Below are positions 1-64,000 of a DNA stretch of 64,000 nt, in pieces. The notes under the pieces are model-generated. The model worked only from the letters and a program-made list of their open reading frames with translations. It had not been told where the DNA came from and made no database searches. The translations under genes and the position numbers were made by a program. Where the stretch lies: positions 178,647 through 242,646 of IMG/VR virus record IMGVR_UViG_3300020477_001008; one strand, 5' to 3'. Within the stretch, counting starts at the first letter, position 1, and each line of letters begins with the position of its first letter.

Positions 1-2
1 AA

Positions 3-1412
3 ACAGCACCGTCGACACTTATTACACAAAAGATAGAACAGATAGATGAAAGACTAGTTCGTGAAAATGCTAAAGTAGAAAGATTTACATTAGATTTAGA
101 AAGATTAAACACAGGTACTAACGTAAGAATAGATACATTAGTAGATACAGAACAAGGCAAATTAGATTCAATTTATTCACGTATTGATAAAGAGATTGCT
201 GATATTACAGCAATTGCTAATACAAGTATTAATACGCAAAAAGAAAGAATAACTCAAGCTAAAGAAAGAGCTGATAGAGATATTGCACAATTAAATGAAG
301 CTAGAGCAAAAACTTGGGGTAAGAAAAGAATTGATGATGAAATAGCAAAGATTAGAGATAATGAATTAGCTGTGGCGGCCGCGGCACAAAAAGAAATAAT
401 AAAAATACAAGAAAAATTAAATGTTGATATACAAGCTATTAAAGACAAATATCAAGCTAGTATTGATGCTATTACAACCAATGTAACAAAGTTAACAGGC
501 GAAGCTGAAGCTACAACAGGTGAAATAGAAGTCAAAGCAGATGAACTTGAAGGAAAACTTACAGTTGTATATGCTAATATTGATGATTTAAATGAAGAAA
601 AATTTGTACTACAATCACAAATTAAAGAGATAGAAGTTGAAGTAGGACCAATAAAATACATAGCAGAATTTGTATATGGTATGGAAGCAGATGCTGATCT
701 ATTAGAAAAATCAGTTAGATGGGTTATTATTATAATTATATTTGTATTTGATCCACTTGCAGTATTATTATTGATTGCGGCAAACTTCTCTTTAAAAAGA
801 AGATTTGGTAGTGATATGGAAGAAATGGTTGAAGCCAAATTTGGTGGCGGAAAATTAGATGACTATTGGAAAGATAGATATCAAGATATGAAAGAAGATC
901 TTTCAAGATTTAATAAACAAAAAGAACACCAAGATACTACACAAGAAGAACATTCAGTTAGTGCCTCATATAATTTAGGTGAAGTTAATGTTGATAATAC
1001 TGATCAATCAGTTGAAGATTATTTAGATGAAGTACAATATGATATAGATCCTAAAGAATTTGAAGGTGTAGAAGAAAACGATTTAGGTCATCCAAATTAT
1101 GATTTAATTAAAGATGAAGAAACAGGTAAAAAGAAATATTGGGAAGACCAAAATAAAGAAGAACAGCTAGAAAGATTTAAACAGCGAGAAGAAGAAGAAA
1201 AACAAGCACTAGAAGAATATTCACGTAAAGCTAGGGAAGAAGATGGCTTTGATCCAGATGAAGTTGAAGGATATGAAGAATTTAATAAAAATTACGAGAA
1301 TAAAGAAGATGACGAATCAGTTAGTATTGCTGAAGATGAAGTAACGCCAACTATAATTGAAGATGTTAAGATTACAGATCTATCCGATGAGGATGTTAAA
1401 AAAAAGACTTAA
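3..1412 (+). CDS. Coiled-coil membrane protein (DUF4407-like phage protein), 5'-truncated by window edge
   Basis: Frame is open from base 3 (the ORF track starts it at GTG 372). Long heptad-like region, then GPIKYIAEFVYG...WVIIIIIFVFDPLAVLLLIAAN transmembrane segment and an acidic tail. Confidence 0.6.
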   Translation, partial: TAPSTLITQKIEQIDERLVRENAKVERFTLDLERLNTGTNVRIDTLVDTEQGKLDSIYSRIDKEIADITAIANTSINTQKERITQAKERADRDIAQLNEARAKTWGKKRIDDEIAKIRDNELAVAAAAQKEIIKIQEKLNVDIQAIKDKYQASIDAITTNVTKLTGEAEATTGEIEVKADELEGKLTVVYANIDDLNEEKFVLQSQIKEIEVEVGPIKYIAEFVYGMEADADLLEKSVRWVIIIIIFVFDPLAVLLLIAANFSLKRRFGSDMEEMVEAKFGGGKLDDYWKDRYQDMKEDLSRFNKQKEHQDTTQEEHSVSASYNLGEVNVDNTDQSVEDYLDEVQYDIDPKEFEGVEENDLGHPNYDLIKDEETGKKKYWEDQNKEEQLERFKQREEEEKQALEEYSRKAREEDGFDPDEVEGYEEFNKNYENKEDDESVSIAEDEVTPTIIEDVKITDLSDEDVKKKT

Positions 1413-1618
1413 AAACCAGGAAAGAGAGAATAAAAAAAATTGACATCAACGATGAAATTAGTGTACAATTAAAAGAAGTAAAAAAAACTATTGATATGGA
1501 AGGCATTAATCAAAGAACTCAAAAAACACTGGCACTCAATCACGGAGCAAAAGGTGAGACAGTAATATCCAAGGCTGACAAAGAATGGTTAGATCAGAAA
1601 TCAGATAATAATAAATGA
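1400..1618 (+). other. A_AAA_AAG slippery heptamer (1400-1406) and 70-codon -1 frame extension ending at TGA overlapping the clpX ATG
   Basis: 0 frame GTT AAA AAA AAG ACT TAA. The -1 frame has a stop just before the A-run, then is open 1406-1615 (DLKTRKERIKKIDIND...DQKSDNNK) and ends in an ATGA overlap. Confidence 0.55.
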
Positions 1619-2907
1619 GCGATAAAGAGATTAAAATGAAATGCTCGTTCTGTGAAAAGACTAGAGCCGAATCACATAAATTAATAGCAGGACCTAAAGA
1701 AACATTTATTTGCGATGAATGTGTAAAACTTTGCCACGATATTTTAAAAGAAGGAACAATTGAAAACGAAACAAAAGAGTTTGCTATTCCTGATCCAAAA
1801 AAATTACACGGATATTTAAATGAACACGTAATTGGTCAAGATAGAGCAAAGAAAATTGTTAGTGTAGCAGTTTATAACCATTATAAAAGAATTGTTAATA
1901 ATTTAATTAAAGAAGATGGGCAAGACGAAATTGAAAAATCTAATGTTATGATGTTAGGACCATCAGGTGTTGGAAAAACACTTTTAGCTAAAAAGGTTGC
2001 TGAATACGTAAATGTACCATTTGCTATTGCTGATGCAACAACAATAACAGAATCAGGTTATGTAGGTGATGACGTAGAGAATATTGTAACAAGATTATTG
2101 CAACAAGCAGACTTTAATGTTGAAAAAGCTGAACGTGGAATTATATACATTGATGAAATAGATAAAAAAGCAAAAAAAGGTGAGAACGTATCAATTACTA
2201 GAGATGTATCTGGTGAAGGTGTACAACAAGCTTTATTAAAAATTATTGAAGGAACAACTGTTAGAGTTCCGCCACAAGGTGGAAGAAAACATCCTGGTGC
2301 AGAAATGATTGAAGTTGATACATCAAATATATTGTTTATAGTTGGTGGAGCATTTGTTGGTATAGATAAAGTTATTAATAAAAGGGCTAATAAGTCAGCA
2401 GGTATTGGATTTAATCAACGAGTAGAAACTGTTGATACAGGATTTGATGAATGCGAACCAGATGATTTAATTAAGTATGGATTAATACCTGAACTTGTTG
2501 GAAGGTTACCAGTTATAGTAGGTTGTCATAATTTAGATAAAAAAGATTTAAAAGCAATTATGCTTGATGTAAAAAATTCATTGATTAAACAATCTCAACG
2601 TTTATTTAAAATGGAAAATGTAAATTTAATTATAACTGAAGATGCAGTAGATTATGTAGTAGATGAAGCACACGAAAAGAAATTAGGTGCTAGAGGATTA
2701 AAATCTGTGTTAGAAAAAGGTTTATTAGAAATACAATATGACTTACCAGAATACAGAGATGGTGGAGTTAGTGAAATTACAGTTACAGAAAAAACGCTCA
2801 AAGGAGAAAAACCGATGCTCACTTATGAGTTTGATGCTAAAGATATAAAAGCTAAAGAAACAAAAAAAGGGAAAAAGGAAGATAACGGTACAACAGGAAA
2901 AGAATGA
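1615..2907 (+). CDS. clpX: ATP-dependent Clp protease ATP-binding subunit ClpX
   Basis: CSFC...CDEC zinc domain, Walker [34 protein letters not shown] loop, GARGL. Confidence 0.97.
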
Positions 2908-3458
2908 AACAAAGATATAGTAATTACGAGTATCAAAAAAAGAAAGCATTAATTAACGAGAATATTAGAAGTAAAGAAGTTCGTTTAATATTAGAATCAT
3001 CACAAGAAATAGTAACTACACAAGAAGCATTAAGATTATCTAGAGAGCAAGATTTAGATCTAGTTTGTGTTAGCACAAAATCAAATCCACCTATATGTAA
3101 AATTATGGATTATGGGAAACATCTATATGAACAAAAAAAGAAACAAAAAATTGCTGATAAAAAACAAAGAGAAGCTATTGTGGATACAAAAGAAATCCAG
3201 TTTAGACCAGCAACTGGAATTGGAGATCTTAAAGTAAAAGCTAAAAAGGTACAAGAGTTTATAGATGATGGAGATAAGGTAAAATTAGTAATGAAATTGC
3301 GTGGCAGGGAAAATGCTATGAAGGATTTTGCTATGGAACAATTCAAAAAATTTGTTGATTTAATTGAGAATTATGACTACGATTATAGGCCAAATATACA
3401 GGGAAATAAAATACTTGCAATTTTAAAGAAAGGTGTTATAATAAAGAACAATGAGTGA
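2904..3458 (+). CDS. infC: Translation initiation factor IF-3
   Basis: [60 protein letters not shown]. Confidence 0.95.
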
Positions 3459-3807
3459 TAAACCAAGGAAAAAATACGACATCAAAAATTTCTCTAATTT
3501 TGGGAAATTTGAGCAAAAGCGAGATCGAAGACCAAGACGTGAGCCAGATCCACCTGGTTTAGCAGTTACAGTTCACGGCGACGATGTAATGAAAGCTTAT
3601 AGAAGGCTTAAAAAGAAACTAATGAAAGATAACCTTATGGATACAATAAGGGATAAAAGATATTACAAAAAGCCAAGTGAAATTAGACAAGAAAAATTAA
3701 AAGTGCAAAGAAGGAATATGCAAAAAGCTCAAAGAGATAGAGCTATGCAATATGGTATAAGATATAAAAACTATGATCCTAGCACAGCCAAAACACGTGG
3801 CTATTAA
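3451..3807 (+). CDS. rpsU: Ribosomal protein bS21 with N-terminal extension
   Basis: VTVHGDDVMKAYRRLKKKL...RDKRYYKKPSEIRQEK matches the bS21 core. Confidence 0.85.
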   Translation: MSDKPRKKYDIKNFSNFGKFEQKRDRRPRREPDPPGLAVTVHGDDVMKAYRRLKKKLMKDNLMDTIRDKRYYKKPSEIRQEKLKVQRRNMQKAQRDRAMQYGIRYKNYDPSTAKTRGY

Positions 3808-4133
3808 TGTTCGACCAAATAAAGTTTCATCAGCACCCCACAGAGAATAAAGGCAAACAAGCTATAATAGATTTTGTAGATTACAAAATGAGTATAGTAT
3901 GCTCACCTACATCTTATGGTGGAGATAAAGGTTTGTTTGAAATTGCAGTATTTGATAAAGCTGGAGAGTTTGTTGATTTAAAAGGTATTAGTGATAAAGA
4001 TGATCAAGTACACGGTTGGTTAAGAGAAGATGAAGTTGTATTAGTAATAGAAAAATTGTGTGAAATAACAGATATGGATGTTAGATTAGTTTTATTGCGT
4101 TCAGCATTTAGGGAGAACAAAAATGATAGATGA
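3807..4133 (+). CDS. Hypothetical phage protein
   Basis: Coupled ORF; SYGGDKGLFEIAVFD resembles a motif I recall from phage hypothetical proteins. Confidence 0.65.
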   Translation: MFDQIKFHQHPTENKGKQAIIDFVDYKMSIVCSPTSYGGDKGLFEIAVFDKAGEFVDLKGISDKDDQVHGWLREDEVVLVIEKLCEITDMDVRLVLLRSAFRENKNDR

Positions 4134-4288: not shown

Positions 4289-4364
4289 GGGCGGTTAGCT
4301 CAGTTGGTAGAGCATCTCGTTTACACCGAGGGGGTCAAAGGTTCGAGTCCTTTACTGCCCACCA
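4289..4364 (+). tRNA. tRNA-Val (TAC)
   Basis: Cloverleaf GGGCGGT/ACTGCCC, anticodon loop TT TAC AC, TTCGAGT, encoded CCA. Confidence 0.97.
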
Positions 4365-4368
4365 TTAC

Positions 4369-4444
4369 GGAGTATTAGTGTAGCGGTTAACACGTCGCCC
4401 TGTCACGGCGAAGACCACGGGTTCGAATCCCGTATACTCCGCCA
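4369..4444 (+). tRNA. tRNA-Asp (GTC)
   Basis: GGAGTAT/ATACTCC acceptor stem, TCGCC CT GTC AC GGCGA, TTCGAAT, CCA. Confidence 0.97.
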
Positions 4445-4462: not shown

Positions 4463-5668
4463 ATGCACAATATTCGAAAACAATTTCCCATATTTGATAA
4501 AACATTACCTAACGGTAAAAAATTAGTATATTTAGATAGTGCTAATTCTTCACAAAAACCGAAAAGGGTATTAGATAGATTATATGATTTTTATGCACAA
4601 GAATATAGTAGTGTTGGGAGAAGTATACACCAGTTAAGTACAGGTGCAAGTAAATGTTTAAATGATAGTAGAGAAGCAGTTGCAAAATTTTTAAATGCTG
4701 GTTCTGTAGATGAAATTGTTTTTACTAAAAGTGCCACAGAAGCTATTAATACGATTGCAGAAAGTTTTGGCAGAACTCAACGTGATCATTATGAAATAAT
4801 TTGTTCTGAATTAGAACATAATTCAAATTATCTTCCTTGGCATTTGCAAAGAGCTCATAAAAATGCAACAATTAAATTTATTCCTTTAAAAGATGATTAT
4901 ACATTAGATGTAGATAAGCTAGAAAGTTTAATTACTAAAAAAACTAAAATGATAGCAATAACTCATTTATCAAATGTTACTGGAGAAGTAATTAATGTTA
5001 AAAAAATATGTGAGATAGCACACAGTAAAGGAATAGCAGTTTTTGTAGATGGTACACAAGGTGCACCACATATGAAAGTTGATGTACAAGATATTGATTG
5101 TGATTTTTATTGTATTAGTGGTCATAAAATGTACGGACCTTCAGGCGTTGGGGCTTTGTACGCCAAAGAAAAATGGTTAGATGAATTATCGCCTTTTCAA
5201 GGTGGTGGTGGAACGGTACTTGATGCAACGCAAAGTGTTATTCAATATGCAGATGGACCAAAAAAATGGGAAGCTGGAACACACCCAGTTGCTGAAATTG
5301 TAGCATTAAAAGAAGCAATTGATTTTTATTATGATGTTGGATTTGATAATATGTTAAATCACGAAAAACAATTAGTTGAGTATTTGTATGAAAAATTAGC
5401 ATCTGATAATGATATTGAGTTACTATGTGGTAATAAGCCTAATGCTGTTTTATCATTTAATATTAAAGGAATACATCACGAAGATATGTCAATGTTTTTA
5501 GATGAATATGGTATTGCTACAAGACCAGGTCAACATTGTGCTATGTTATTCCATAAAAGGTACAGTTTAACTGGTTCTGTTAGAGTATCATTAGGTGTAT
5601 ATAATACCAAAGAAGAAATGGACTTTTTCTTACAGTCTTTGGGTGAAATTAAGAAGAGATTATCCTAA
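4463..5668 (+). CDS. sufS: Cysteine desulfurase, SufS type
   Basis: YLDSANSSQKP, DGTQG, SGHKMYGP (PLP Lys), EAGT, RPGQHCA (catalytic Cys). Confidence 0.93.
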   Translation: MHNIRKQFPIFDKTLPNGKKLVYLDSANSSQKPKRVLDRLYDFYAQEYSSVGRSIHQLSTGASKCLNDSREAVAKFLNAGSVDEIVFTKSATEAINTIAESFGRTQRDHYEIICSELEHNSNYLPWHLQRAHKNATIKFIPLKDDYTLDVDKLESLITKKTKMIAITHLSNVTGEVINVKKICEIAHSKGIAVFVDGTQGAPHMKVDVQDIDCDFYCISGHKMYGPSGVGALYAKEKWLDELSPFQGGGGTVLDATQSVIQYADGPKKWEAGTHPVAEIVALKEAIDFYYDVGFDNMLNHEKQLVEYLYEKLASDNDIELLCGNKPNAVLSFNIKGIHHEDMSMFLDEYGIATRPGQHCAMLFHKRYSLTGSVRVSLGVYNTKEEMDFFLQSLGEIKKRLS

Positions 5669-9961: not shown

Positions 9962-10891
9962 ATGATGAGAAAAATAATAAGCACAGCCTTGGTTGTATTA
10001 TTTGCAGGTTTTCTTTTTTCATTAACAGCTTGTAGTGAAGCTGAAGCAGTAGAAACAAATATCTACGGTTCAATAAACTATAAAGTTAGTAATGATGAAG
10101 ACACAAACGGCAAACACAATTTAAAGGCCGAAAATAACTCATCTTATGTTGGTATAGATGCCAGCGAAGGTATAGGCGAAGGCATAACAGGTTTCGCTAA
10201 ATTAGAAGTTGGCGTTGATACTGACGACAGTAATAACAATCCTTTTGATTCAAAGTTAGCCTATGTAGGTTTAAACTTTGGTGAGATTGGATCTGTATCT
10301 GCTGGGCGACAGTCATCTCCGTTCACTGATAATGTTAGTGGAAACACAGATGTATTTGAAGTTTATGGTTCAGGTGCTGATCAAAGTTTGTTCGTAAGAG
10401 ATACAAACACGATTGCGTACTCGAACGTATTAGGCCCACTTACATTTGATGGCTTGGCCAAAATAGATGGATCTACTGGTAAAAGTGGTGTAGATGTTGG
10501 AGAAGCAACAGTTACATACAATGGCAGTACGTTCACAGTATCAGGCGGTATGTCTAATGATAATGTCAATGACATTGATTATTATGGTGTTGGACTTACA
10601 GCAGATGCTTCATCTATAGGGCTTCCAATAACTGTGGGTTATACTCACACGTTAAAAGATGCCGCAACTGATGTAACAGGCAATGAAATCATTGGATCTT
10701 ATTCTACAGGTAATACAACAATTACAGGTGGATACGGTAAAATCGAAGATTCAACAGCATTTTATACTGCCGGTGCATCATTTGGAATAACTGATTCTTT
10801 ATCTACGTATGTTGAGTATGAACATTCAGATAAAACTGGATCATCTAATGATACAGACAATTATTCCACAGGTCTTAAATTTACTTTCTAA
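9962..10891 (+). CDS. Gram-negative outer-membrane porin
   Basis: Signal peptide, IYGSINY first strand, SSYVGIDASEGIGEG, AYVGLNFG...GR, amphipathic strands, C-terminal GLKFTF with terminal Phe. Confidence 0.85.
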   Translation: MMRKIISTALVVLFAGFLFSLTACSEAEAVETNIYGSINYKVSNDEDTNGKHNLKAENNSSYVGIDASEGIGEGITGFAKLEVGVDTDDSNNNPFDSKLAYVGLNFGEIGSVSAGRQSSPFTDNVSGNTDVFEVYGSGADQSLFVRDTNTIAYSNVLGPLTFDGLAKIDGSTGKSGVDVGEATVTYNGSTFTVSGGMSNDNVNDIDYYGVGLTADASSIGLPITVGYTHTLKDAATDVTGNEIIGSYSTGNTTITGGYGKIEDSTAFYTAGASFGITDSLSTYVEYEHSDKTGSSNDTDNYSTGLKFTF

Positions 10892-11599: not shown

Positions 11600-13492
11600 A
11601 TGAGTAAAATAATTGGAATAGACTTAGGTACTACAAACTCTTGCGTTTCAGTAATGGAGGGTAAAGGTGCTAAAGTAATCGAAAATGCTGAAGGAAATAG
11701 AACAACACCTTCAGTTGTATCATTTGGAGATGAAAGATTAGTAGGTACACCGGCTAAAAGACAAGCGGTAACAAATCCAACTAATACAATTTTTGCAACC
11801 AAAAGATTAATTGGAAGAAAGTTTGATGGAGATTCTGTACAAAAAGATATACAGACATCACCATTTAAAATAGTAAAAGCAGATAACGGAGATGCTTGGG
11901 TAGAAAGTAATGGTGAAAAATACTCACCAAGTCAAATCTCAGCTTTCGTTTTACAAAAAATGAAAGAGACTGCTGAAAAGTATTTGGGACAAGAAGTAAC
12001 TAAAGCAGTTATTACCGTTCCTGCATACTTTAATGATTCACAAAGACAAGCAACTAAAGACGCAGGTAAAATTGCAGGACTTGATGTTGAACGTATAGTA
12101 AATGAACCAACAGCGGCGGCACTTGCTTATGGGCTTGATAAAAAGAAATCAGGTACAGTAGCAGTATACGATTTAGGTGGTGGTACATTTGATATTTCTA
12201 TATTAGAAATTGGCGATGGAGTATTTGAAGTTAAATCAACAAATGGTGATACATCATTAGGTGGTGAAGACTTTGATAATGTTTTAGTCAACTATATTGT
12301 TAGTGAATTTAAAAAAGATTCAGGTGTAGATTTAAAAAATGATAATCTTGCACTTCAACGTGTAAGAGAAGCGGCGGAAAAAGCAAAATGTGAATTATCA
12401 TCTGCAACACAAACAGATATTAGTTTACCATTTATTACCGCTGATAAATCTGGACCAAAACATTTAAATCTTAAACTTACAAGAGCTAAATTTGAAGCAC
12501 TTGTTGATAGTTTAATTGATAAAACACTAGAACCTTGTAAGACTGCCTTAAAAGATGCAGAACTTTCAGCAGGAGATATTAATGAAGTAATACTTGTTGG
12601 TGGTATGACAAGAATGCCAAAAGTTGAACAAGCAGTTAAAAACTTCTTTGGAAAAGATCCACATAAAGGAGTTAATCCAGATGAGGTAGTGGCAATTGGT
12701 GCCGCGATACAAGCCGGTGTGCTTCAAGGAGATGTAAAAGATGTATTGTTGTTAGACGTTACACCTTTATCACTTGGTATTGAAACATTAGGTAGTGTAT
12801 GTACAAAACTGATTGAAAAGAATACAACTATTCCTACAAGAAAAAGCCAAGTATTCTCTACAGCAGAAGATAGCCAACCTGCTGTTTCAATAAGAGTACT
12901 ACAAGGTGAAAGAGAAATGGCCGCTGATAATAAGTTATTAGGTAACTTTGAATTAGTTGGTATTGCACCTGCTCCAAGAGGAGTTCCACAAATCGAAGTA
13001 ACATTTGATATTGATGCAAATGGTATTGTAAATGTATCTGCTAAAGATAAAGGTACAGGCAAAGAACAAAAAATACAAATACAAGCATCAGGTGGATTGT
13101 CAGATGATGAAATTGACAAAATGGTTAAAGACGCAGAAGCAAATAAAGATGCTGATAAAAAGAAAAGAGAAGAAGTAGATACTAAAAACCAAGGAGATAC
13201 TTTAGTTCACTCTGTTGAAAAACAGTTAAAAGAACACGGAGACAAGTTATCTGCTGAAGATAAAAGTAAACTTGAAGAAGATGTTAATGCATTAAAAGAA
13301 GCATTAAAGTCTGACAATAGTGATGCTATTAAAGATAAAGTAAAATCTTTAACAGAGTCAGCAATGAAACTTGGTGAAGCAGTATACAAATCACAACAAT
13401 CAGAACAACCACAGCAAGAACAAAAAACAAAAGACGATAATGTAGTTGATGCTGATTTCGAAGAAGTCAATAAAAAAGACAGCAAACAGTAA
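11600..13492 (+). CDS. dnaK: Molecular chaperone DnaK (Hsp70)
   Basis: [76 protein letters not shown]. Confidence 0.99.
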
Positions 13493-15838: not shown

Positions 15839-16140
15839 TGACTGAAGAAAAATCAAATCAGCAAGTACAAACAGATGTAGAAATAAAAGAACCAAGTAGA
15901 TATAATGTTCTGTTTATGAATGATGATTATACACCAATTGATTTTGTTCAACAATTATTAACAGATATATTTTATCATAAGCCTGATGATGCATCAGAAT
16001 TAGCAAAATTAATTCACGAAAAAGGTAAAGCAATTGTAGGAACATATACATATGAGGTTGCTGAACAAAAATCAATAGAATCAACAACGATGGCTAGATC
16101 CGCTGGACATCCTTTACAAGTAACAATAGAACAAGAATAA
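15838..16140 (+). CDS. clpS: N-end-rule adaptor ClpS
   Basis: YNVLFMNDDYTPIDFV, IHEKGKAIVGTYTYEVAEQK, HPLQVTIE. Confidence 0.92.
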   Translation: MTEEKSNQQVQTDVEIKEPSRYNVLFMNDDYTPIDFVQQLLTDIFYHKPDDASELAKLIHEKGKAIVGTYTYEVAEQKSIESTTMARSAGHPLQVTIEQE

Positions 16141-17108
16141 TGTTTAGATTTTTTACCGCTAGAAAATGGCTATTATGGGCCTGGTTAGGTTCTGCTATTA
16201 TTTTAGGATCACTTTGGGTACAAGTAGAAATTGATGTTAAAATAAATGAATGGTTTGGTGTGTTTTATGATATGATTCAAAAAGCACTTGCAACACCGAA
16301 TGCAATTACAATAGAAGAATACTTTGGAAGTTTATTATCGTTTATAACACTTGCAGGAATATATGTTGGTGTTTATGTTTTAATAAGTTATTTTACAGCA
16401 CACTTTCTTTTTAGATGGCGTACAGCAATGGTAGAATGGTACCATAGTGTTTACGATAAAGCTCGTAAAATTGAAGGTGCGGCACAACGGGTTCAAGAAG
16501 ATACAATTAAATTTAGTCGTATTATGGAAGGACTTGGTACAAGTCTAATTGAAGCTATAATGATTTTAATTCAATTTATTCCAATCTTATTTGGTTTAAG
16601 TATTGGTATACCAATTTTCTTTTTTGGTGATTGGGAATATGGATTAATAGTTGGTGCATTAGTTTGGACAATTGGTGGTACTGTATTCTTGATTGGATTA
16701 GGATGGTTATTACGACTAGTTGGTGTAGAATATGATATACAAAAGAAAGAGGCCGCATATAGAAAAATACTTGTAATAGCAGAAGACGATAATACTGTAA
16801 GACCAAAAACAATTAATGAGTTGTTTGATGATGTCCGACAAATTCACTTTTTAAGTTATCTACGTTATCTATATTTTAATATTGGGCGAATGGCATACTT
16901 ACAAGCCAATGTTTTATCAGCCTATGTATTTTTAGCACCAGCCATAGTTGCTGGAGTAATGACACTTGGAGTTATGCAACAAATTATAAGAGCATTTGGA
17001 AGAGTTGAAGGTTCTATGCAATATTTGTTAAAAGCTTGGCCAACAATCATTGAATTAATGAGTGTTTATAGAAGATTACGAGAATTCGAAGCTAAATTAC
17101 CAAAATAA
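16140..17108 (+). CDS. sbmA: SbmA/BacA peptide transporter
   Basis: INEWFGVFYDMIQKAL, FRWRTAM, IEGAAQRVQEDT, EYDIQKKEAAYRKILV, FGRVEGSMQYL, SVYRRLREFE. Confidence 0.85.
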   Translation: MFRFFTARKWLLWAWLGSAIILGSLWVQVEIDVKINEWFGVFYDMIQKALATPNAITIEEYFGSLLSFITLAGIYVGVYVLISYFTAHFLFRWRTAMVEWYHSVYDKARKIEGAAQRVQEDTIKFSRIMEGLGTSLIEAIMILIQFIPILFGLSIGIPIFFFGDWEYGLIVGALVWTIGGTVFLIGLGWLLRLVGVEYDIQKKEAAYRKILVIAEDDNTVRPKTINELFDDVRQIHFLSYLRYLYFNIGRMAYLQANVLSAYVFLAPAIVAGVMTLGVMQQIIRAFGRVEGSMQYLLKAWPTIIELMSVYRRLREFEAKLPK

Positions 17109-20168: not shown

Positions 20169-21245
20169 ATGTATACAATAGAACAAATAAAAACAATACA
20201 CTTAGAAATTACCCAAAAGTGTCAAGCCGCTTGTCCAATGTGCGACAGAAATCAAAATGGCGGAGACCTTAATCCACATATAAAATTAGACGAATTAACA
20301 TTACAAGACTGTAAACAAATTTTTACACCTTCATTTATATCACAATTAAAGAAAATGTATATGTGTGGTAATTTAGGTGATCCTGTAATTGCTACTGATA
20401 CTTTAGAAGTATTTGAATACTTTAGACAACACAATCCAAACATATGGTTGAATATGCATACAAACGGTGGTGCTAAAAAACCTGAGTGGTGGAAAGATTT
20501 AGCAAAAGTTATTGGCAAAAATGGAGACGTTACTTTTAGTGTTGATGGGTTAGAAGATACAAATCATTTATACAGGCAAAATGTTAATTGGAAACTTGTA
20601 GACCAATCAATGAAAGCATATATTGAAGGTGGTGGAAAAGTTAGATGGGATTATTTAATATTTGATCACAATCAACATCAAGTAGAAGAAGCAGAACAAT
20701 ATGCCAAGTCAATTGGTGTACATAAATTTCAAGCAAAGAAAACAGGTAGATTTATTACTACTACAAGTCAAGCTAAACAATCACACCAAGCAGTAAATCG
20801 TAAAGGTAAAGAAACTCAAGAATTAAAAAAGCCAGATGATAAGTTTGTAAACAAAGCTCTTAAAAAACAAGACTCTTTACTTGACAAATATGGTTCTATG
20901 GATGCATACTACGATAAAGTACCAATTTGGTGCAAAGTAAAAGATGAAGGTAGTTTATATATTAGTGCAGAAGGACTAGCATTACCTTGTTGTTGGACAG
21001 CAGGTAGAATGTACAAATGGTGGCATAAAGATCCTAAAGTAGAACAAATATGGAATCATATAGATGAAGTAGGTGGAAAACAAATGCTTGATGCTAAAAA
21101 CGGATTAGATAAAGTTTTTAATACTGGAATATTTGATTCAATTGAAAAGAGTTGGAATATTGATGGCTGTAATAACGGCAAATTAAAAGTATGTTCTATG
21201 AAATGTGGTAAAGAATTTGATCCATTTGCAGAACAGTTTAACTAA
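20169..21245 (+). CDS. Radical SAM protein, class B (core + C-terminal Cys module)
   Basis: CQAACPMC, GNLGDP, HTNGG, FSVDGLEDTNHLYR; C-terminal C...PCC...CSMKC. Confidence 0.9.
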   Translation: MYTIEQIKTIHLEITQKCQAACPMCDRNQNGGDLNPHIKLDELTLQDCKQIFTPSFISQLKKMYMCGNLGDPVIATDTLEVFEYFRQHNPNIWLNMHTNGGAKKPEWWKDLAKVIGKNGDVTFSVDGLEDTNHLYRQNVNWKLVDQSMKAYIEGGGKVRWDYLIFDHNQHQVEEAEQYAKSIGVHKFQAKKTGRFITTTSQAKQSHQAVNRKGKETQELKKPDDKFVNKALKKQDSLLDKYGSMDAYYDKVPIWCKVKDEGSLYISAEGLALPCCWTAGRMYKWWHKDPKVEQIWNHIDEVGGKQMLDAKNGLDKVFNTGIFDSIEKSWNIDGCNNGKLKVCSMKCGKEFDPFAEQFN

Positions 21246-21272
21246 TTAAATTACCAATAAATATAGTAAAAG

Positions 21273-37003: not shown

Positions 37004-37078
37004 GGTCCCTTCGTCTATCGGTTAGGACAGCGGTTTTTCATACCGCAAAGAGGAGTTCGATTCTCCTAGGGACTACCA
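37004..37078 (+). tRNA. tRNA-Glu (TTC)
   Basis: GGTCCCT/AGGGACT, GCGGT TT TTC AT ACCGC, TTCGATT, CCA. Confidence 0.96.
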
Positions 37079-41438: not shown

Positions 41439-42086
41439 ATGGAACAGAAACAATACAATTTAAAAACAGCACTTTCTATAGCTTGTGACATTTTTGATAA
41501 GCAAGGCTATGTAAAAGAAATACAACCAGGTAAAGACGTTGATACTAATAAATCCGTTTTATCTAAAAGGTTGGACAAAGAACCTAATTTTGTCCATTCT
41601 AATATAAAAGACATATTAAACTTTAAGCAAGAATTGGTTTTTAAAAAATTGAGTGGTAAATTATCTGACTATGAACATTTAGTTATTAAAATTTTAGAAA
41701 AAGAAAAAATGGATTTAAGAGAAATGGGCATAGTAGCAAGTGTACCATTAATGTATAGTAATGCTATGAAGAAAAGAGCAAAACAAGAAAAATACGAGAG
41801 TTTTCAACAAACAAGTCAGTTTCGTGGAGTACTTGGACAAAAATATTATGCACCAGTTGTATTATTAGACAAGATGTATCATAATAGAGGATTTTGGATT
41901 TACACATTTGTTGAAGATGGTAAGCATATTTTAAAATGGTTAACTGGAAAAGATTATGAAGAGTTTACTAAAGGATCTAAGATTAAATTAAGTGGTGTAG
42001 TTAAATTACATAATACTACAGGATACTATGGTGATGAAACTACATTAAGAAGTTGTAAACTAATAAGGGATATTGAAAATGCATAA
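41439..42086 (+). CDS. Hypothetical protein, possible C-terminal OB-fold
   Basis: Beta-rich C-terminus (G..VKLH...YG..TTL) resembling phage OB domains. Confidence 0.55.
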   Translation: MEQKQYNLKTALSIACDIFDKQGYVKEIQPGKDVDTNKSVLSKRLDKEPNFVHSNIKDILNFKQELVFKKLSGKLSDYEHLVIKILEKEKMDLREMGIVASVPLMYSNAMKKRAKQEKYESFQQTSQFRGVLGQKYYAPVVLLDKMYHNRGFWIYTFVEDGKHILKWLTGKDYEEFTKGSKIKLSGVVKLHNTTGYYGDETTLRSCKLIRDIENA

Positions 42087-46993: not shown

Positions 46994-47542
46994 ATGACAC
47001 AGCACATTATGATCGATCTGGAGACGTTAGCCACAACTATAGATGCCAATATTCTAACAATAGGTGCTATAAAGTTTGACCCCAATGAAGATTATAGTAA
47101 CTGGAAGTGGGGAGAGTATCCTAAGACGCAGGTTTTCTATAGAAGAATTGATCCTGAATCTGGATCCAAAATTGGATTGAAAAATGATGATGAAACTATT
47201 GCTTGGTGGAGTCAGCAATCAGATGAAGTTAAAGCTGAAGCATTCGCTGAAGAAGAAAGATATCCAATTGACCAAGTAATGAAAGAGTTTTATAAATTTT
47301 GTTTGCCTGGAAAATATTTTTGGGCTCAAGGTGTAGCTTTTGATACTGTAATATGTGAACAAGTATTTAAAAAATTAAAACGTGGTGCTCCTTGGATGTT
47401 TTATAATTTACGTGATACTAGAACATTATTTGATTTAAAAGATCCAAATATGCCAAGTGCTAGACACCATCACGCATTATTTGATTGTTGGAGACAAATT
47501 GTAGGGGTACAAAATGTTTATAGACAAATCTACAAAAATTAA
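46994..47542 (+). CDS. DEDDh 3'-5' exonuclease
   Basis: IMIDLETL, QGVAFD, RDTRTL, HHALFD. Confidence 0.8.
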   Translation: MTQHIMIDLETLATTIDANILTIGAIKFDPNEDYSNWKWGEYPKTQVFYRRIDPESGSKIGLKNDDETIAWWSQQSDEVKAEAFAEEERYPIDQVMKEFYKFCLPGKYFWAQGVAFDTVICEQVFKKLKRGAPWMFYNLRDTRTLFDLKDPNMPSARHHHALFDCWRQIVGVQNVYRQIYKN

Positions 47543-48602
47543 AAGAATAGGTTTTTGTTGTAAATGGTTAAACGATCCTAGTGAAACTAGGGGTATGAAA
47601 ATCAATGCTAAAGATAGAGATCTAAATGGTAGAGCAACTACTATGCGTTGGTTACGAGAACATCCAGAAGAAGCAGAACAAAGACAATGGGACATTATGA
47701 ATCATAATGCCACAGCCGCTCGTAAAATGATTGAACGTGTAGCAACATTACCTTTAGAACGTAGAATGGTTAGATTAGGTAGTGAAATGTTACAAGGTTA
47801 CACAGAACCTAATTGGATTGATTGGTGGCAACAAAAAAATGTCCAAGATCATTTAGAAAAAATATTTGCACCTGTTGGTGATGCTTCAAGAAAACATAAT
47901 GTTAAGATAAGTTTTCATCCTGGGCAATTTTGTGTACTTGCAAGTGCCACACCTGATATTGTAGAACGTAGTATATTAGAATTTGAATATCACGCAGATA
48001 TGGCTCGTTGGATGGGTTTTGGCAAAAGCTTTCAAGATGGTTGCAAACTAAATGTACATATTTCAGGTAAGCAAGGTCCAGAAGGCATTATTAAAGTATT
48101 ACCCAAATTATCATCAGAAGCAAGAAATCTTATTACTATTGAAAATGATGAAATGGGTTGGGGCCTAGATGCTAGTTTACAATTAGAAAATCATTTAGCA
48201 TTAGTATTAGATATACATCATCATTGGATACGTGATGAAGAATATATACGACCTACAGATGATAGGGTTAAAAGAGTTATTGATAGTTGGCGTGGTCAAC
48301 GTCCTACTTTACATTATTCATATAGTAGAGATGAAGCACTTGCTCCTGCAAATTTAGGAAACAAAATGCATACAGAAATGCACAATATAAAAGATTTAAT
48401 AGCCAAAGGCTGTAAAAAACAAAAATTAAGAGCTCATAGCGACTTTTATCCTAATAAAAAAGCAAATGATTGGGCTTTAAGTTTTAATGAAGAATTTGAC
48501 ATACAGGCAGAGTCCAAGGGTAAAAATTTAGCTTCGCAGATGCTTTATGAACAGTCTATTGGTGTAAAACAGTTAAATGAAGAGTGGCAAGCCGTTTGTT
48601 AA
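47514..48602 (+). CDS. uvsE: UV-damage endonuclease (UvsE/UVDE)
   Basis: RIGFCC, RMVRLGSE, ISFHPGQF, NVHISG, TIENDE, LVLDIHHH, LHYS, RAHSD, QAESKGKN. Confidence 0.9.
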   Translation: MFIDKSTKIKRIGFCCKWLNDPSETRGMKINAKDRDLNGRATTMRWLREHPEEAEQRQWDIMNHNATAARKMIERVATLPLERRMVRLGSEMLQGYTEPNWIDWWQQKNVQDHLEKIFAPVGDASRKHNVKISFHPGQFCVLASATPDIVERSILEFEYHADMARWMGFGKSFQDGCKLNVHISGKQGPEGIIKVLPKLSSEARNLITIENDEMGWGLDASLQLENHLALVLDIHHHWIRDEEYIRPTDDRVKRVIDSWRGQRPTLHYSYSRDEALAPANLGNKMHTEMHNIKDLIAKGCKKQKLRAHSDFYPNKKANDWALSFNEEFDIQAESKGKNLASQMLYEQSIGVKQLNEEWQAVC

Positions 48603-56503: not shown

Positions 56504-57142
56504 ATGGACCTTGAATATCTAAAAAAATTAGCAGGGATAGGTGAGCAGAATCAAATGAAAAGTTTGGCTCAAGAAATGGCCGAACGTAGAAGAGACATTA
56601 TGAAAAATGTAATGAAAGAACAAAAAGAAGAACAATTGGAATTACAAGCACTTCCTTACAAAATTACAGATTTAGCACCAGTACTATCAAAAGAAAATGT
56701 TGATTATCATTATGATATATTAAGTAGAGGATACGTAAACAGATATAATAATAATGAAGGCGATTCAGACTTTAATTATGGTGGTGCAAAACTACACAAT
56801 TTATGGTGGCAACAATTTAAACCAGCAAAAGAAACATCAAATTACAGCGGTCCTATAAAGCAAACTATAGATGCTAATTATGGTGATTTAAAAGGTTTAG
56901 AAGAAAAATTAGTTGAAGCCGCAATGACTATACAAGGATCAGGATGGGTTTATCTAACTAAAACTGGAACAATTAAAACAACACCAAATCAAAGTTACAA
57001 ACCAGATGTGTTTATGCCTATAGATATGTGGGAACACAGCTTCACGGACTATGTACCAGCCAAAGACGCAAAGGTTAAATACATTAAAGCAGTTCTTAAA
57101 TTAATAGATTGGAATGCGATTAATAGAAGGTTAGAAGGATGA
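56504..57142 (+). CDS. sod: Fe/Mn superoxide dismutase with N-terminal extension
   Basis: LPY...YHY, LHNLWW, QGSGW, PNQ, DMWEH: all four metal ligands present; Gly-Gly and NQ suggest Mn-type. Confidence 0.9.
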   Translation: MDLEYLKKLAGIGEQNQMKSLAQEMAERRRDIMKNVMKEQKEEQLELQALPYKITDLAPVLSKENVDYHYDILSRGYVNRYNNNEGDSDFNYGGAKLHNLWWQQFKPAKETSNYSGPIKQTIDANYGDLKGLEEKLVEAAMTIQGSGWVYLTKTGTIKTTPNQSYKPDVFMPIDMWEHSFTDYVPAKDAKVKYIKAVLKLIDWNAINRRLEG

Positions 57143-58750: not shown

Positions 58751-58826
58751 GCCGCTTTAGCTCAGTTGGTAGAGCAACTGATTTGTAATCAGTAGGTCCG
58801 CGGTTCGAGTCCGTGAAGCGGCACCA
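58751..58826 (+). tRNA. tRNA-Thr (TGT)
   Basis: GCCGCTT/AAGCGGC, ACTGA TT TGT AA TCAGT, CCA. Confidence 0.97.
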
Positions 58827-58837
58827 GGCTACCACAT

Positions 58838-58913
58838 TCCTCGGTAGCTCAGTTGGTAGAGCAGTTGACTGTTAATCAATTGGTCGCAGGTTCGAGTCCT
58901 GCCCGAGGAGCCA
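58838..58913 (+). tRNA. tRNA-Asn (GTT)
   Basis: TCCTCGG/CCGAGGA, GTTGA CT GTT AA TCAAT, CCA. Confidence 0.97.
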
Positions 58914-59994: not shown

Positions 59995-60000
59995 CTTAAT

Positions 60001-60233: not shown

Positions 60234-60240
60234 TCTTAAT

Positions 60241-60316
60241 GGGGGATTAGCTCATCTGGGAGAGCGCCTGATTTGCATTCAGGAGGTGGCTGGTTCGAGT
60301 CCAGTATCCTCCACCA
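60241..60316 (+). tRNA. tRNA-Ala (TGC)
   Basis: GGGGGAT/ATCCTCC with G3:U70, CCTGA TT TGC AT TCAGG, CCA. Confidence 0.97.
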
Positions 60317-60409
60317 AATTCATTAATAATTATAATAGCATATTTTAAATCATTAACTCATCATTTAAATACAGTTATACGGTATAGGAATAACTAAAAA
60401 GAGAGAGCG

Positions 60410-61390
60410 ATGAGTTTAAAACAAATTATTGAAACAGTTGGTATAGTTGGAATGGCGGCATTATTTTGCTGGTTCCTATTAATGAGTGCTACAAGTATGA
60501 ATAGAGCATACGCAGATGTAACAAACTCAGGTGCAACTACAAATACGCAAACAAATACTTCAGGTTCAAACACTACTATCTCAGGTGGTTATGCGGCTGA
60601 AACAACAAACACATATCAGGATGGCTCATCAAACAATACTACTACTAATAACGATACTACTAATACAACAAATAACAAATCAACTATTCCAGTACCAAGT
60701 GCAGGTGCTCCAAGTATGAGTGCTTACTCTCAAGATGTTTGTGCTGTTGGTAGATCAGGTGGTTTACAATTACCAGGTGTTGGTTTATCAGGTGGTAGTA
60801 CAGCAAGAGATATGAATTGTGAACGTATGAAGCTTTCTAAATTATTAAATGATTATGGTATGAAGGTTGCCGCGGTGGCAATACTCTGCCAAGACGAAAG
60901 AGTGTTTGAAGCAATGGAACAAGCAGGTACTCCTTGTCCGTTTGAAGGTCGAATTGGTAAAGATGCAAAAGCACAATGGGAAAAATACGATATTGAAAGA
61001 CCAGATTACGACAAGTATGTTGAGAAAATGGATGAACGTTTAGAAATAGATGAACGTATTATGAAAGAAGAAGGTGTACTTGAAGAAAACGAAACTTTAA
61101 AAGTAAACATAAAACAAATTGCAAAAGATAATAAAAAATTACAAAAAGAAATACAAAAGTTACAAAAAATGCAGGCAGAATTACTAGCGGCGGCTGAGGA
61201 AGAAGCATCTAAAACAGAAAAGATGATATTACCAAAGAAAAAGCCAGTAGTAGAAACAGTGAATCCAGAAGTGCATACTGATAATAATGATGAGCAGGCT
61301 TGGAATGAGCTTGATGATGAAGCTGTAGAAGATCCATCTGAAGTAATTGAGCCAGTAGCAGAGACAGAATACAATTCAGCAGGGAAGTAA
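60410..61390 (+). CDS. Secreted/membrane protein with Cys-containing conserved domain
   Basis: N-terminal hydrophobic segment, Thr/Asn-rich repeats, SQDVC...NCERMKLSK...LCQDERVFEAM..AGTPCP, coiled coil. Confidence 0.7.
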   Translation: MSLKQIIETVGIVGMAALFCWFLLMSATSMNRAYADVTNSGATTNTQTNTSGSNTTISGGYAAETTNTYQDGSSNNTTTNNDTTNTTNNKSTIPVPSAGAPSMSAYSQDVCAVGRSGGLQLPGVGLSGGSTARDMNCERMKLSKLLNDYGMKVAAVAILCQDERVFEAMEQAGTPCPFEGRIGKDAKAQWEKYDIERPDYDKYVEKMDERLEIDERIMKEEGVLEENETLKVNIKQIAKDNKKLQKEIQKLQKMQAELLAAAEEEASKTEKMILPKKKPVVETVNPEVHTDNNDEQAWNELDDEAVEDPSEVIEPVAETEYNSAGK

Positions 61391-61393
61391 TAG

Positions 61394-63584: not shown

Positions 63585-63588
63585 ACTA

Positions 63589-63617
63589 TTGACAAAAACC
63601 AATTTGTACAATAGTAT
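63589..63617 (+). promoter_or_regulatory. Sigma70-type promoter for tRNA-Gly
   Basis: TTGACA-N17-TAGTAT. Confidence 0.65.
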
Positions 63618-63627
63618 AGAAGTATAG

Positions 63628-63702
63628 GCGGGTGTAGCTCAGTGGTAGAGCGTCTCGTTGCCAACGAGAAGGTCAAGGGTTCGAACCCCTTTACCCGCTC
63701 CA
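63628..63702 (+). tRNA. tRNA-Gly (GCC)
   Basis: GCGGGTG/TACCCGC, TCTCG TT GCC AA CGAGA, CCA. Confidence 0.97.
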
Positions 63703-63716
63703 GACAAAGGATTGAA

Positions 63717-64000
63717 ATGCAAGAAGAAAAATTTAAAAAATTCACTGGAATGGTCCAGCAAGAAATATACAGTGAGCCAGACTCAGAATTACATCAAAAA
63801 TTAATTGATGAAATATTTCCTGCTTTAGCACAAAGGCCAGATGGTCCAAAAAAGGATGAAAAAATTCTTGATATTGGTTGTGGACCAGGTTTAGTTATGG
63901 ACAAGTTAGTTGAACTAGGTTATAAAAAAGAAAATTTAGTTGGGCTTACAAAAGGTAAATCAGATATTCAAAGAGTAACAGAAAAAGGTTATCGTGTTGT
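63717..64000 (+). CDS. Class I SAM-dependent methyltransferase, 3'-truncated
   Basis: MQEEKF...KILDIGCGPG; runs off the window end. Confidence 0.75.
   Translation, partial: MQEEKFKKFTGMVQQEIYSEPDSELHQKLIDEIFPALAQRPDGPKKDEKILDIGCGPGLVMDKLVELGYKKENLVGLTKGKSDIQRVTEKGYRV

What the first reader, a model, noticed from the sequence alone, without database searches (positions are those of the whole stretch)
1..64000. Apparent avoidance of CATG and GCWGC enforced through codon-pair choice
Seen (by eye, not an exhaustive count): His before a G-starting codon is CAC (CACGAA, CACGGA, CACGTA); Pro/Thr/Ala-Trp use CCT/CCG/ACT/GCT/GCG rather than NCA-TGG; Ala-Ala starts with GCG or GCC (e.g. GTGGCGGCCGCGGCA at 372, GCGGCGGCT at ~61187) despite the AT-rich bias. 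I found no CATG, GCAGC or GCTGC, while GATC, GANTC, GGCC and CCGG are present. Known: phages deplete restriction sites of their hosts (NlaIII-type CATG; TseI/ApeKI-type GCWGC). Inference: a fingerprint of two host restriction specificities, useful for host assignment and implying these sites are not protected by DNA modification.
Basis: partly seen in the sequence, partly recalled or inferred. Interest (0 to 1): 0.65.

Follow-up and report, generated by a model that had tools for sequence, protein, structure and literature searches.

The report
Restriction-site-free marine jumbo phage genome
This 64-kb stretch, the whole 243-kb marine giant-phage contig it belongs to and all sampled close relatives contain no CATG or GCWGC at all, which is an extreme case of the well-known trick by which phages delete the cutting sites of bacterial restriction enzymes.

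Summary
CATG and GCAGC/GCTGC are absent from the window, from the whole 242,646-bp contig, and from 21 related viral contigs (177 kb). One relative has three clustered CATG. Codon-preserving shuffles of the contig expect 427±15 CATG and 167±6 GCWGC.

The ban works mainly through synonymous codon-pair choice. It also holds in non-coding DNA, on both strands, in a host-derived dnaK and in the tmRNA tag. It has lowered His-(V/A/D/E/G) dipeptides to about 0.6 of expectation.

The contig is an incomplete (about 55%) uncultured marine T4-like jumbo myovirus. An alphaproteobacterial tmRNA with a short SAR11-like tag and a DnaK sister to Pelagibacteraceae suggest a SAR11-like host.

Host restriction is the best explanation. 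Unrelated SAR11 phages also eliminate GCWGC, and one podovirus lineage independently lacks CATG. About 16% of sampled Pelagibacteraceae genomes carry C5-methyltransferase genes; of the 16 loci examined, four had nuclease genes (two of named restriction-enzyme families) next to them.

The cognate enzymes were not identified. Phages of a single host strain carry very different avoidance sets, so the fingerprint is a poor tool for host assignment. This is a new, extreme member of a known kind.

The parts
1..64000 (.). DNA with no CATG, GCAGC or GCTGC on either strand. It is the last 64 kb of a 242,646-bp contig that is equally free of these sites.
   Evidence: Counts. Nulls. Codon-context tables.
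372..386 (+). Ala run written GTG GCG GCC GCG GCA. It uses the rare GCG and GCC codons so that no GCWGC forms.
   Evidence: Exact match at 372-386. Ala-Ala starts with GCG or GCC in 189 of 189 cases.
61187..61195 (+). GCG GCG GCT, a second example of Ala-Ala written to avoid GCWGC.
   Evidence: Exact match at 61187-61195.
11600..13492 (+). dnaK (Hsp70) of SAR11-like origin with both motifs removed.
   Evidence: 78% identity to Pelagibacteraceae DnaK, and sister to that family in a tree with aLRT 99. Fourteen SAR11 dnaK genes carry 41 CATG and 64 GCWGC; the phage copy carries none. At homologous positions 73 of 105 keep the amino acids and use other codons, for example CATGG to CACGG and GCWGC to GCG/GCC-GC.

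Best explanation
This is restriction-site avoidance. It is an uncultured marine T4-like jumbo myovirus, most likely of a SAR11-like (Pelagibacterales) alphaproteobacterium. The lineage has been under long, strong selection by DNA-cutting defence enzymes of its host pool that recognise CATG and GCWGC (or asymmetric GCAGC).

The phage does not appear to methylate these sites. Any genome carrying one is cut on entry, so every mutation that creates a site is purged. The result is a genome with no sites in coding or non-coding DNA.

The ban is achieved mostly by synonymous codon-pair choice: CAC instead of CAT before G, NNT instead of NNC before ATG, NCT/NCG instead of NCA before TG, and GCG/GCC as the first codon of Ala-Ala. 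It is achieved partly by avoiding the dipeptides themselves.

Shown: the depletion, its codon mechanics, its conservation across the clade, its convergence in unrelated SAR11 phages, and the presence of C5-methyltransferase genes, some with nuclease genes beside them, in Pelagibacteraceae. Inferred: that such systems have these two specificities, and that the host is SAR11-like.
For: 1. Size of the effect. CATG is 0 against 427+-15 and GCWGC is 0 against 167+-6 in codon-preserving shuffles of the contig. Non-ORF DNA has 0 against 85 and 0 against 22.

2. Real selection, not miscalling. X-Met dipeptides occur at expected frequency but always with NNT. His-G contexts are all CAC. Ala-Ala always starts with GCG or GCC.

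3. Recognition of duplex DNA. GCAGC and GCTGC are both absent from the + strand of a window where all but one listed ORF of at least 150 aa lie on +.

4. Conservation. All 21 relatives at 70-93% tail-sheath identity, from many metagenomes (177 kb), have 0 and 0 against roughly 750 and 170 expected (first-order Markov, summed from the per-locus figures). The exception is three CATG clustered in L105.

5. A host-derived dnaK and the tmRNA tag have been stripped of sites. SAR11 tags end gct-gct; the phage tag ends GCG-GCC.

6. Convergence in unrelated SAR11 phages. GCWGC is 0/45 (HTVC109P), 0/31 (Gjalp), 13/49 (HTVC019P), and zero in 12 of 20 informative uncultured HTVC019P-type loci. One podovirus lineage has CATG 0/31, 0/16 and 0/13, while its nearest sampled relative has 50/48.

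7. Possible agents exist. 48 of 301 sampled Pelagibacteraceae genomes carry C5 DNA methyltransferase genes. Neighbours of some include RE_NgoFVII, RE_Eco47II and HNH_2 nucleases. GCWGC methyltransferases listed in PMC11033074 are m5C enzymes. By my own knowledge, not checked here, SMRT methylome surveys detect m5C poorly.

8. No methyltransferase (PF01555, PF00145, PF02086) is in the contig.

9. Complete site elimination is a documented phage strategy, seen in about one-tenth of viral genomes (PMC6286503).
Against: - No enzyme with CATG or GCWGC specificity was found in any SAR11 genome. The specificities of the SAR11 systems seen are unknown.
- SAR11 methylomes published so far show only GANTC/GAWTC (PMC8919816, PMC9516812). 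CATG methyltransferases listed in PMC11033074 are m6A enzymes, which by my own knowledge SMRT should detect.
- None of eight cultured pelagiphages lacks CATG (O/E 0.48-1.07).
- The phage does not avoid GATC, GGCC, CCWGG or GANTC, which most HTVC019P-type pelagiphages eliminate. It therefore either infects a different host subset or has another protection.
- SAR11 genomes show no self-avoidance.
- The host is inferred only from a tmRNA, one gene tree, G+C content and habitat.
- The contig is about 55% complete, so a phage methyltransferase or nuclease could lie in the missing part.
Confidence: 0.7

Rival explanations
1. Self-immunity by site absence. The phage lineage itself encodes one or two site-specific nucleases (CATG, GCWGC) that shred host or competitor DNA. 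The phage genome survives because it contains no sites, rather than through methylation.
For: The ban is total, clade-wide and stable across metagenomes from many studies, which suits a constant agent carried by the phage. SAR11 restriction systems are sporadic (PMC13712998). SAR11 DNA carries a CATG or GCWGC every few hundred bases. About 45% of the genome is unseen.
Against: No candidate gene was found. HNH, GIY-YIG and Mrr_cat searches found nothing above cut-off except one weak 128-aa HNH-like ORF. The phage has no homologue of the proteins sampled around SAR11 methyltransferase genes, nucleases included. The same bans occur in unrelated small podoviruses, which would each need their own nuclease. 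One relative tolerates three CATG.
Confidence: 0.1
2. Avoidance of being methylated. Host orphan methyltransferases would mark CATG and GCWGC on phage DNA. Methylation-dependent (Type IV) nucleases in the next host would then cut it, so the phage removes the target sites.
For: C5 and D12 methyltransferase genes, several with no nuclease family recognised in the neighbours examined, occur in Pelagibacteraceae. AIPR and DUF4420 proteins sit beside some of them.
Against: No Type IV enzyme or matching methyltransferase specificity was identified. It needs two components where classical restriction needs one. The pattern is the same as classical Type II avoidance (PMC6286503).
Confidence: 0.07
3. 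The motifs are banned for a reason unrelated to DNA cleavage, for example an RNA-level target of an endoribonuclease, or a reserved regulatory or packaging signal.
For: A different word, TATAAATA, does behave as a reserved signal: all 15 copies lie outside ORFs. This shows that signal reservation occurs in this genome.
Against: There are zero copies anywhere, so nothing is 'reserved'. Both GCAGC and its complement GCTGC are absent from the sense strand, which argues against a strand-specific RNA target. Non-coding DNA is also free of both motifs. Both are typical Type II recognition sites.
Confidence: 0.03
4. Artefact of sequencing, base-calling at modified motifs, or assembly.
For: Motif-specific miscalls are known for long-read-only assemblies (my own knowledge, not checked here).
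Against: Miscalls would change amino acids and deplete X-Met dipeptides. Instead the amino acids are kept and only synonymous codons differ. Twenty-one independent contigs from other metagenomes show the same absence. Independently assembled contigs of other runs match stretches of the window with no differences (table 8).
Confidence: 0.01

Closest known systems
Restriction-site avoidance in lytic dsDNA phages (systematic survey: Rusinov et al. 2018, PMC6286503)
   Same: Short Type II-like palindromes are eliminated completely or almost completely. The effect is strongest for orthodox Type II sites and non-temperate dsDNA phages. It works on the principle 'no sites, no cleavage'.
   Different: A 4-bp site expected several hundred times is entirely absent from at least 243 kb. 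The ban is conserved across a clade diverged to 70% sheath identity. Neither the host nor the cognate enzymes are known. Dipeptide usage is measurably shifted.
GANTC depletion in pelagiphages (Seong et al. 2022, PMC9516812)
   Same: Motif depletion that follows phage clades in marine SAR11-associated phages, although SAR11 genomes are regarded as poor in restriction-modification systems.
   Different: Different motifs are involved. This phage is not depleted in GANTC (492 observed against 439 expected). In the pelagiphages sampled here the avoided set is far wider than GANTC: GATC, CCWGG, GGCC, GCGC, GCWGC, CASTG and CTNAG.
Type II systems acting on CATG (m6A methyltransferases such as M.ThaIV and M.TvoI) and on GCWGC (m5C methyltransferases such as M.ApeKI), as listed in PMC11033074
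   Same: These are exactly the two recognition sequences missing here.
   Different: The listed examples are archaeal. No homologue or specificity was established in any candidate host of this phage. An asymmetric GCAGC enzyme would leave the same footprint.
PA5oct-like and Rak2-like jumbo myoviruses
   Same: Tail sheath 40% identical over its full length to Pseudomonas phage PA5oct and about 35% to the 121Q/PBECO4 group. T4-type baseplate wedge and hub proteins are present. The genome exceeds 200 kb.
   Different: This phage is marine, has 32% G+C and is only distantly related. It carries SAR11-like dnaK, an alphaproteobacterial tmRNA and a long radical-SAM gene array.

Membership tests
Restriction-site avoidance (anti-restriction by site elimination) | Recognition-type word significantly under-represented against composition-aware and codon-aware nulls | tested here: met
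   CATG 0 against 427+-15 and GCWGC 0 against 167+-6. Window alone: 0 against 77+-7 and 0 against 22+-3.
Restriction-site avoidance (anti-restriction by site elimination) | Depletion acts on duplex DNA: both strands, coding and non-coding | tested here: met
   GCAGC and GCTGC are both 0 on the sense strand. Non-ORF DNA has 0 against 85 and 0 against 22.
Restriction-site avoidance (anti-restriction by site elimination) | Achieved by selection that preserves protein sequence (synonymous changes) | tested here: met
   Codon-context tables. dnaK comparison: 73 of 105 sites replaced with the amino acids kept.
Restriction-site avoidance (anti-restriction by site elimination) | A restriction enzyme of that specificity exists in the host | tested here: inconclusive
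   The host is only inferred. Pelagibacteraceae carry C5 methyltransferase genes, some with nuclease genes beside them, but their specificities are unknown. No NlaIII-like pair was found next to D12 methyltransferases.
Restriction-site avoidance (anti-restriction by site elimination) | Independent phages of the same host pool converge on the same site | tested here: met
   GCWGC is zero in HTVC109P and Gjalp, and in 12 of 20 informative HTVC019P-type loci. CATG is zero in one podovirus lineage.
Restriction-site avoidance (anti-restriction by site elimination) | The phage lacks a protective methyltransferase for the site | tested here: inconclusive
   PF01555, PF00145 and PF02086 gave no match in the contig, but the contig is about 55% complete.
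Restriction-site avoidance (anti-restriction by site elimination) | Re-introducing the site makes the phage restrictable | not testable with these tools
   The phage is uncultured.
T4-like jumbo myovirus (PA5oct/Rak2-related) | Contractile-tail and T4-type baseplate proteins; genome over 200 kb | tested here: met
   phrog_10581 tail sheath (E 4.7e-264), phrog_10646 baseplate wedge (E reported as 0) and gp5-like hub. 40% sheath identity to PA5oct. 242,646 bp and still incomplete.
Pelagiphage (phage of SAR11) | Infects Pelagibacterales | tested here: inconclusive
   Alphaproteobacterial permuted tmRNA at 152.8 bits. Nine-residue tag ADENLALAA, compared with SAR11 tags ANESYALAA, ANNKFALAA and ANDNELALAA. 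DnaK is sister to Pelagibacteraceae. The phage is marine and has 32% G+C. There is no direct host link.

The most novel reading that the evidence does not exclude
The CATG ban, which is total across this jumbo-phage clade but absent from all eight cultured SAR11 phages examined, may not be imposed by host restriction. It could be imposed by a CATG-cutting nuclease carried by the phage lineage itself, in the unsequenced 45% of the genome. That nuclease would shred host and competitor DNA while the phage stays immune simply by having no sites, a restriction enzyme without a methylase.
Probability: 0.08. Interest if true: 0.8.

Novelty: new member of a known kind. Interest (0 to 1): 0.45.

Why it matters
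SAR11 is the most abundant bacterial group in the ocean and is usually described as nearly defenceless. Several results here point to DNA restriction, probably largely m5C-based, as a strong and long-standing force on SAR11-type phages:
- A giant phage with SAR11-like genes has purged every CATG and GCWGC from at least 243 kb.
- Unrelated SAR11 phages have purged overlapping sets of palindromes.
- About one in six sampled Pelagibacteraceae genomes carries a C5-methyltransferase gene; of the 16 such loci examined, four had nuclease genes beside it.

By my own knowledge, SMRT methylome surveys see m5C poorly, so such systems could have been missed. The avoided words give concrete, testable predictions of the specificities to look for. 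The case also shows that a site ban can reach into protein composition: His-(V/A/D/E/G) dipeptides are about 40% below expectation.

Tried and rejected
- Near-identity DNA search of the phage collection found no match.
- My first guess that the contig was bacterial (DnaK, tmRNA, tRNAs) was dropped once structural phage genes and the IMG/VR record type were seen.
- Self-avoidance in SAR11 DNA: 22 dnaK loci and 2 x 200 kb of two genomes carrying restriction-modification genes show no depletion of CATG or GCWGC. The intended positive control (GGNCC in the genome with an Eco47II-like enzyme) is not depleted either, so this approach is uninformative.
- Population variants from other runs: 0 of 40 listed SNPs create a site, but only 0.63 were expected, so there is no statistical power.
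- Nuclease hunt in the phage: HNH, GIY-YIG and Mrr_cat family searches, plus phmmer with proteins sampled around SAR11 methyltransferase genes (nucleases included), gave nothing usable.
- Neighbours of SAR11 D12 adenine methyltransferases: no NlaIII-like nuclease was recognised.
- Base-calling or assembly artefact was rejected.
- RNA-level or strand-specific targets were rejected.
- A Pfam/PADLOC scan of all roughly 200 ORFs was not run. It would have needed one call holding a very long list of references.
- The large protein searches, structure prediction and complex prediction were not used because the question did not depend on them.


Full report
**Observation.** The window contains no CATG, GCAGC or GCTGC, while GATC (166), GANTC (138), GGCC (53) and CCGG (17) are present. 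Expected CATG is 165-231 under composition and Markov models, and expected GCWGC is 24-39. A conservative null shuffles synonymous codons within each ORF, and so inherits the biased codon usage. It still expects 77+-7 CATG (minimum 55) and 21.6+-2.6 GCWGC (minimum 13) in the window. The window is the last 64 kb of a single 242,646-bp contig, and that contig also has zero of each. Expectations for the contig are 427+-15 and 167+-6 by codon shuffle, or 712 and 204 by maximal-order Markov. The 31 kb outside ORFs of at least 100 aa has 0 CATG against 85 expected and 0 GCWGC against 22. Among the sixteen 4-bp palindromes CATG is unique at O/E 0.00. GCGC is 0.30, TCGA 0.52 and CGCG 0.76; the other twelve lie at 0.91-1.24.

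**How the ban is written.** My ORF calls cover about 70,700 codons.
- His before a G-starting codon is CAC 291 times and CAT never. Elsewhere CAT leads by about 3:1.
- Ser, Pro, Thr and Ala before Cys or Trp never use NCA (0 of 314), although NCA is their commonest codon.
- No codon ending in C precedes Met (0 of 1,505). X-Met dipeptides for the NNY-only amino acids occur at expected numbers, for example Asp-Met 109 against 106.
- Ala-Ala always starts with GCG or GCC (189 of 189), although GCA and GCT make up 86% of Ala codons. More than half of all GCG codons in the genome sit in this context.
- CAG or CTG is never flanked by both a preceding G and a following C.
- No ATG start codon follows a C.

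The amino acids are kept and only codons move. This is selection, not base-calling error, which would have altered residues and depleted the dipeptides. The ban also reaches the proteins. His-(V/A/D/E/G) dipeptides stand at O/E 0.62 in this contig and 0.57 in its close relatives. The same ratio is 0.97 in distant relatives that keep CATG, 0.93 in SAR11 and 0.89 in other pelagiphages, and the Gln control is about 1.0 everywhere.

**What the sequence is.** The contig encodes a T4-type tail sheath, a baseplate wedge and a gp5-like hub. Its sheath is 40% identical to that of Pseudomonas phage PA5oct and about 35% to the 121Q/PBECO4 group. The record is an IMG/VR viral contig, linear, with CheckV completeness 55%. 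It is therefore an uncultured jumbo myovirus whose full genome is probably much larger. Near-identical sequence occurs in marine and seawater metagenomes from 11 studies. Independently assembled contigs from other runs match stretches of the window without any difference.

**Host clues.**
- The contig carries a permuted alphaproteobacterial tmRNA (Rfam RF01849, 152.8 bits; contig 172221-172515).
- Its tag has nine residues, ADENLALAA. SAR11 tags are similarly short: ANESYALAA, ANNKFALAA and ANDNELALAA.
- The contig encodes a DnaK 78% identical to Pelagibacteraceae DnaK. In a tree it is sister to that family with aLRT 99, although on a long branch.
- G+C content is 32%.

I take the host to be SAR11-like with moderate confidence; there is no direct link.

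**The ban is old and clade-wide.** Twenty-one IMG/VR contigs with 70-93% sheath identity, from many different metagenomes and totalling 177 kb, all have zero GCWGC. All but one have zero CATG. The exception, L105, has three CATG within 1.1 kb, in a divergent ORF syntenic to contig positions of about 133-134 kb. More distant relatives (36-53% identity) mostly have normal counts. Several sublineages lack GCWGC only (L109-L111, L157, L159-L164), and L149 lacks both. Acquired genes have been cleaned. Fourteen SAR11 dnaK genes carry 41 CATG and 64 GCWGC in total, and the phage copy carries none. At the homologous positions 73 of 105 keep the same amino acids with other codons. SAR11 tmRNA tags end gct-gct, which forms GCTGC, while the phage tag ends GCG-GCC.

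**Who imposes it.** The contig has no DNA methyltransferase of the three main Pfam families. It has no HNH, GIY-YIG or Mrr-type nuclease above cut-off, only one weak 128-aa HNH-like ORF. It has no homologue of the proteins sampled around SAR11 methyltransferase genes, nucleases included.

The comparison with unrelated SAR11 phages is the most informative evidence.
- Eight cultured pelagiphages show many totally eliminated palindromes. GCWGC is 0/45 in HTVC109P, 0/31 in Gjalp and 13/49 in HTVC019P.
- Other eliminated or strongly depleted sites in various combinations are GATC, GCGC, GGCC, CCWGG, GGWCC, CASTG, CTNAG, TCGA and GANTC.
- Across 80 uncultured HTVC019P-type contigs, GATC is 14 against 1,034 expected, CCWGG 6/332 and GCWGC 161/558. 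GCWGC is zero in 12 of 20 informative loci.
- CATG is 1,557/1,936 overall in those contigs. One tight lineage (L311, L305, L310; 96-100% TerL nucleotide identity) has 0/31, 0/16 and 0/13. Its nearest sampled relative, L304, has 50/48.

Both bans therefore arise independently in small podoviruses of the SAR11 phage world. This favours an agent on the host side over a nuclease private to the jumbo-phage lineage.

Such agents are plausible in SAR11. Of 301 sampled Pelagibacteraceae genomes, 48 carry C5 cytosine methyltransferase genes, some in tandem. Neighbours of some include RE_NgoFVII-family, RE_Eco47II-family and HNH_2 nucleases, as well as DUF4420 and AIPR proteins. GCWGC methyltransferases listed in the literature are m5C enzymes (PMC11033074). 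By my own knowledge, SMRT sequencing detects m5C poorly. That could explain why marine methylome surveys report only GANTC/GAWTC for SAR11 (PMC8919816, PMC9516812). A recent survey also finds sporadic restriction-modification and other defences in SAR11 (PMC13712998).

**Limits.**
- No enzyme of either specificity was identified. CATG methyltransferases listed in PMC11033074 are m6A enzymes, which by my own knowledge SMRT should see. D12 adenine methyltransferases occur in only 10 of 301 genomes, and none has a recognisable NlaIII-like partner.
- The footprint cannot separate a palindromic GCWGC enzyme from an asymmetric GCAGC enzyme.
- SAR11 DNA is not depleted in either word.
- This phage keeps GATC, GGCC, CCWGG and GANTC at normal levels, unlike most HTVC019P-type phages. 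It either sees a different host subset or has some other protection.
- Phages isolated on one strain, HTCC1062, carry very different avoidance sets. The fingerprint reflects a lineage's history across a pool of hosts and is a weak host-assignment tool.

**Rivals.**
- A phage-borne nuclease with self-immunity by site absence is not excluded, because 45% of the genome is missing. It has no candidate gene and is made less likely by the convergence in podoviruses and by L105's three tolerated sites.
- Avoidance of host methylation followed by Type IV attack is possible but less economical.
- RNA-level or signal explanations fail, because both GCAGC and GCTGC are missing from the sense strand and there are no copies at all.
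- An artefact is excluded by the codon evidence and by independent assemblies.

**Verdict.** The restriction-avoidance reading is the best explanation (confidence about 0.7), but the enzymes, the host and the usefulness for host assignment remain unproven. The phenomenon is well known (PMC6286503). This is an unusually complete and deep example in an uncultured marine jumbo phage, and it suggests that restriction matters more in the SAR11 phage world than is usually assumed.

Noticed in passing
window 20169-36973 and 40239-41408: A tandem array of genes of roughly 360-575 aa. At least ten have radical SAM (some with SPASM) domain matches, several below Pfam's cut-off. Similar weak radical-SAM hits occur at contig 42-47 kb. 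The function is unknown, and this is unusual cargo for a phage.
   Followed up: partly
window 4463-5668, 37097-37864, 56504-57142: A cysteine desulfurase (Aminotran_5, E 3e-123), a ferredoxin-reductase-like FAD/NAD protein and an Fe/Mn superoxide dismutase. They may supply and protect Fe-S clusters for the radical SAM enzymes.
   Followed up: no
window 9962-10891, 11600-13492, 16140-17108, 42073-43368, 47514-48602: Cellular-type genes in a phage: a porin-like protein, DnaK, an SbmA/BacA-family transporter, an ATP-dependent DNA ligase and a UvdE UV endonuclease.
   Followed up: partly
contig G000 125472-125948 (- strand; outside the window, locus L087:5472-5948): A phage-encoded ribosomal protein L11 with both Pfam L11 domains (E 1e-29 and 1e-25).
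   Followed up: no
contig G000 172221-172515 (outside the window, locus L089:12221-12515): An alphaproteobacterial permuted tmRNA gene with tag ADENLALAA. Its final Ala-Ala is written GCG-GCC, where SAR11 tmRNAs use gct-gct.
   Followed up: yes
whole contig; window tRNAs at 4289-4441, 37004-37075, 58751-58910, 60241-60313, 63628-63699: Nine tRNA genes lie in the contig, seven of them in the window. From about contig position 126 kb to the end, all but one of my ORF calls (at least 100 aa) lie on the + strand, with strong G>C and A>T skew.
   Followed up: no
whole contig: TAAATA/TATTTA is depleted (225 observed against 524 expected, z = -20). The T4-type late-promoter word TATAAATA occurs 15 times, and all 15 copies lie outside ORFs. 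This suggests T4-like late promoters that are kept out of coding sequence.
   Followed up: partly
whole contig: There are weaker secondary depletions. AGCGC/GCGCT is 6 against 54, ACGCT/AGCGT 33 against 129, AACGCT/AGCGTT 2 against 45, CTWAG 113 against 240 and GCAAGC/GCTTGC 4 against 30. Of the 24 surviving GCGC, 14 are followed by C and only two are preceded by A. These may be further, less stringent restriction targets. GCSGC is over-represented as a by-product of the Ala-Ala escape route.
   Followed up: partly
loci L169-L171, L177-L179, L243-L244, L245-L324: SAR11 phages as a group eliminate many palindromes. HTVC019P-type contigs show GATC 14/1,034, CCWGG 6/332, GGCC 64/393 and GCGC 137/438. 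HTVC010P has CTNAG 0/63, HTVC008M has TCGA 0/34, and Gjalp has CASTG 0/33. In the papers I found, only GANTC depletion is reported (PMC9516812).
   Followed up: partly
loci L193-L208, L239-L242 (Pelagibacteraceae genomes): C5 DNA methyltransferase genes occur in 48 of 301 sampled Pelagibacteraceae genomes. Several are tandem pairs or sit next to RE_NgoFVII, RE_Eco47II, HNH_2, DUF4420 or AIPR genes. This is more restriction-modification than the usual 'defenceless SAR11' picture suggests.
   Followed up: partly
locus L105:4916-5996: The only CATG sites in the close relatives are three copies within 1.1 kb. They lie in a divergent ORF syntenic to contig positions of about 133-134 kb. Possible causes are a recent recombinant segment or a chimeric assembly.
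   Followed up: partly
contig G000 57689-69874 (- strand; outside the window): A single ORF of 4,061 aa lies next to the baseplate wedge gene. It is presumably a giant structural or fibre protein and was not examined.
   Followed up: no
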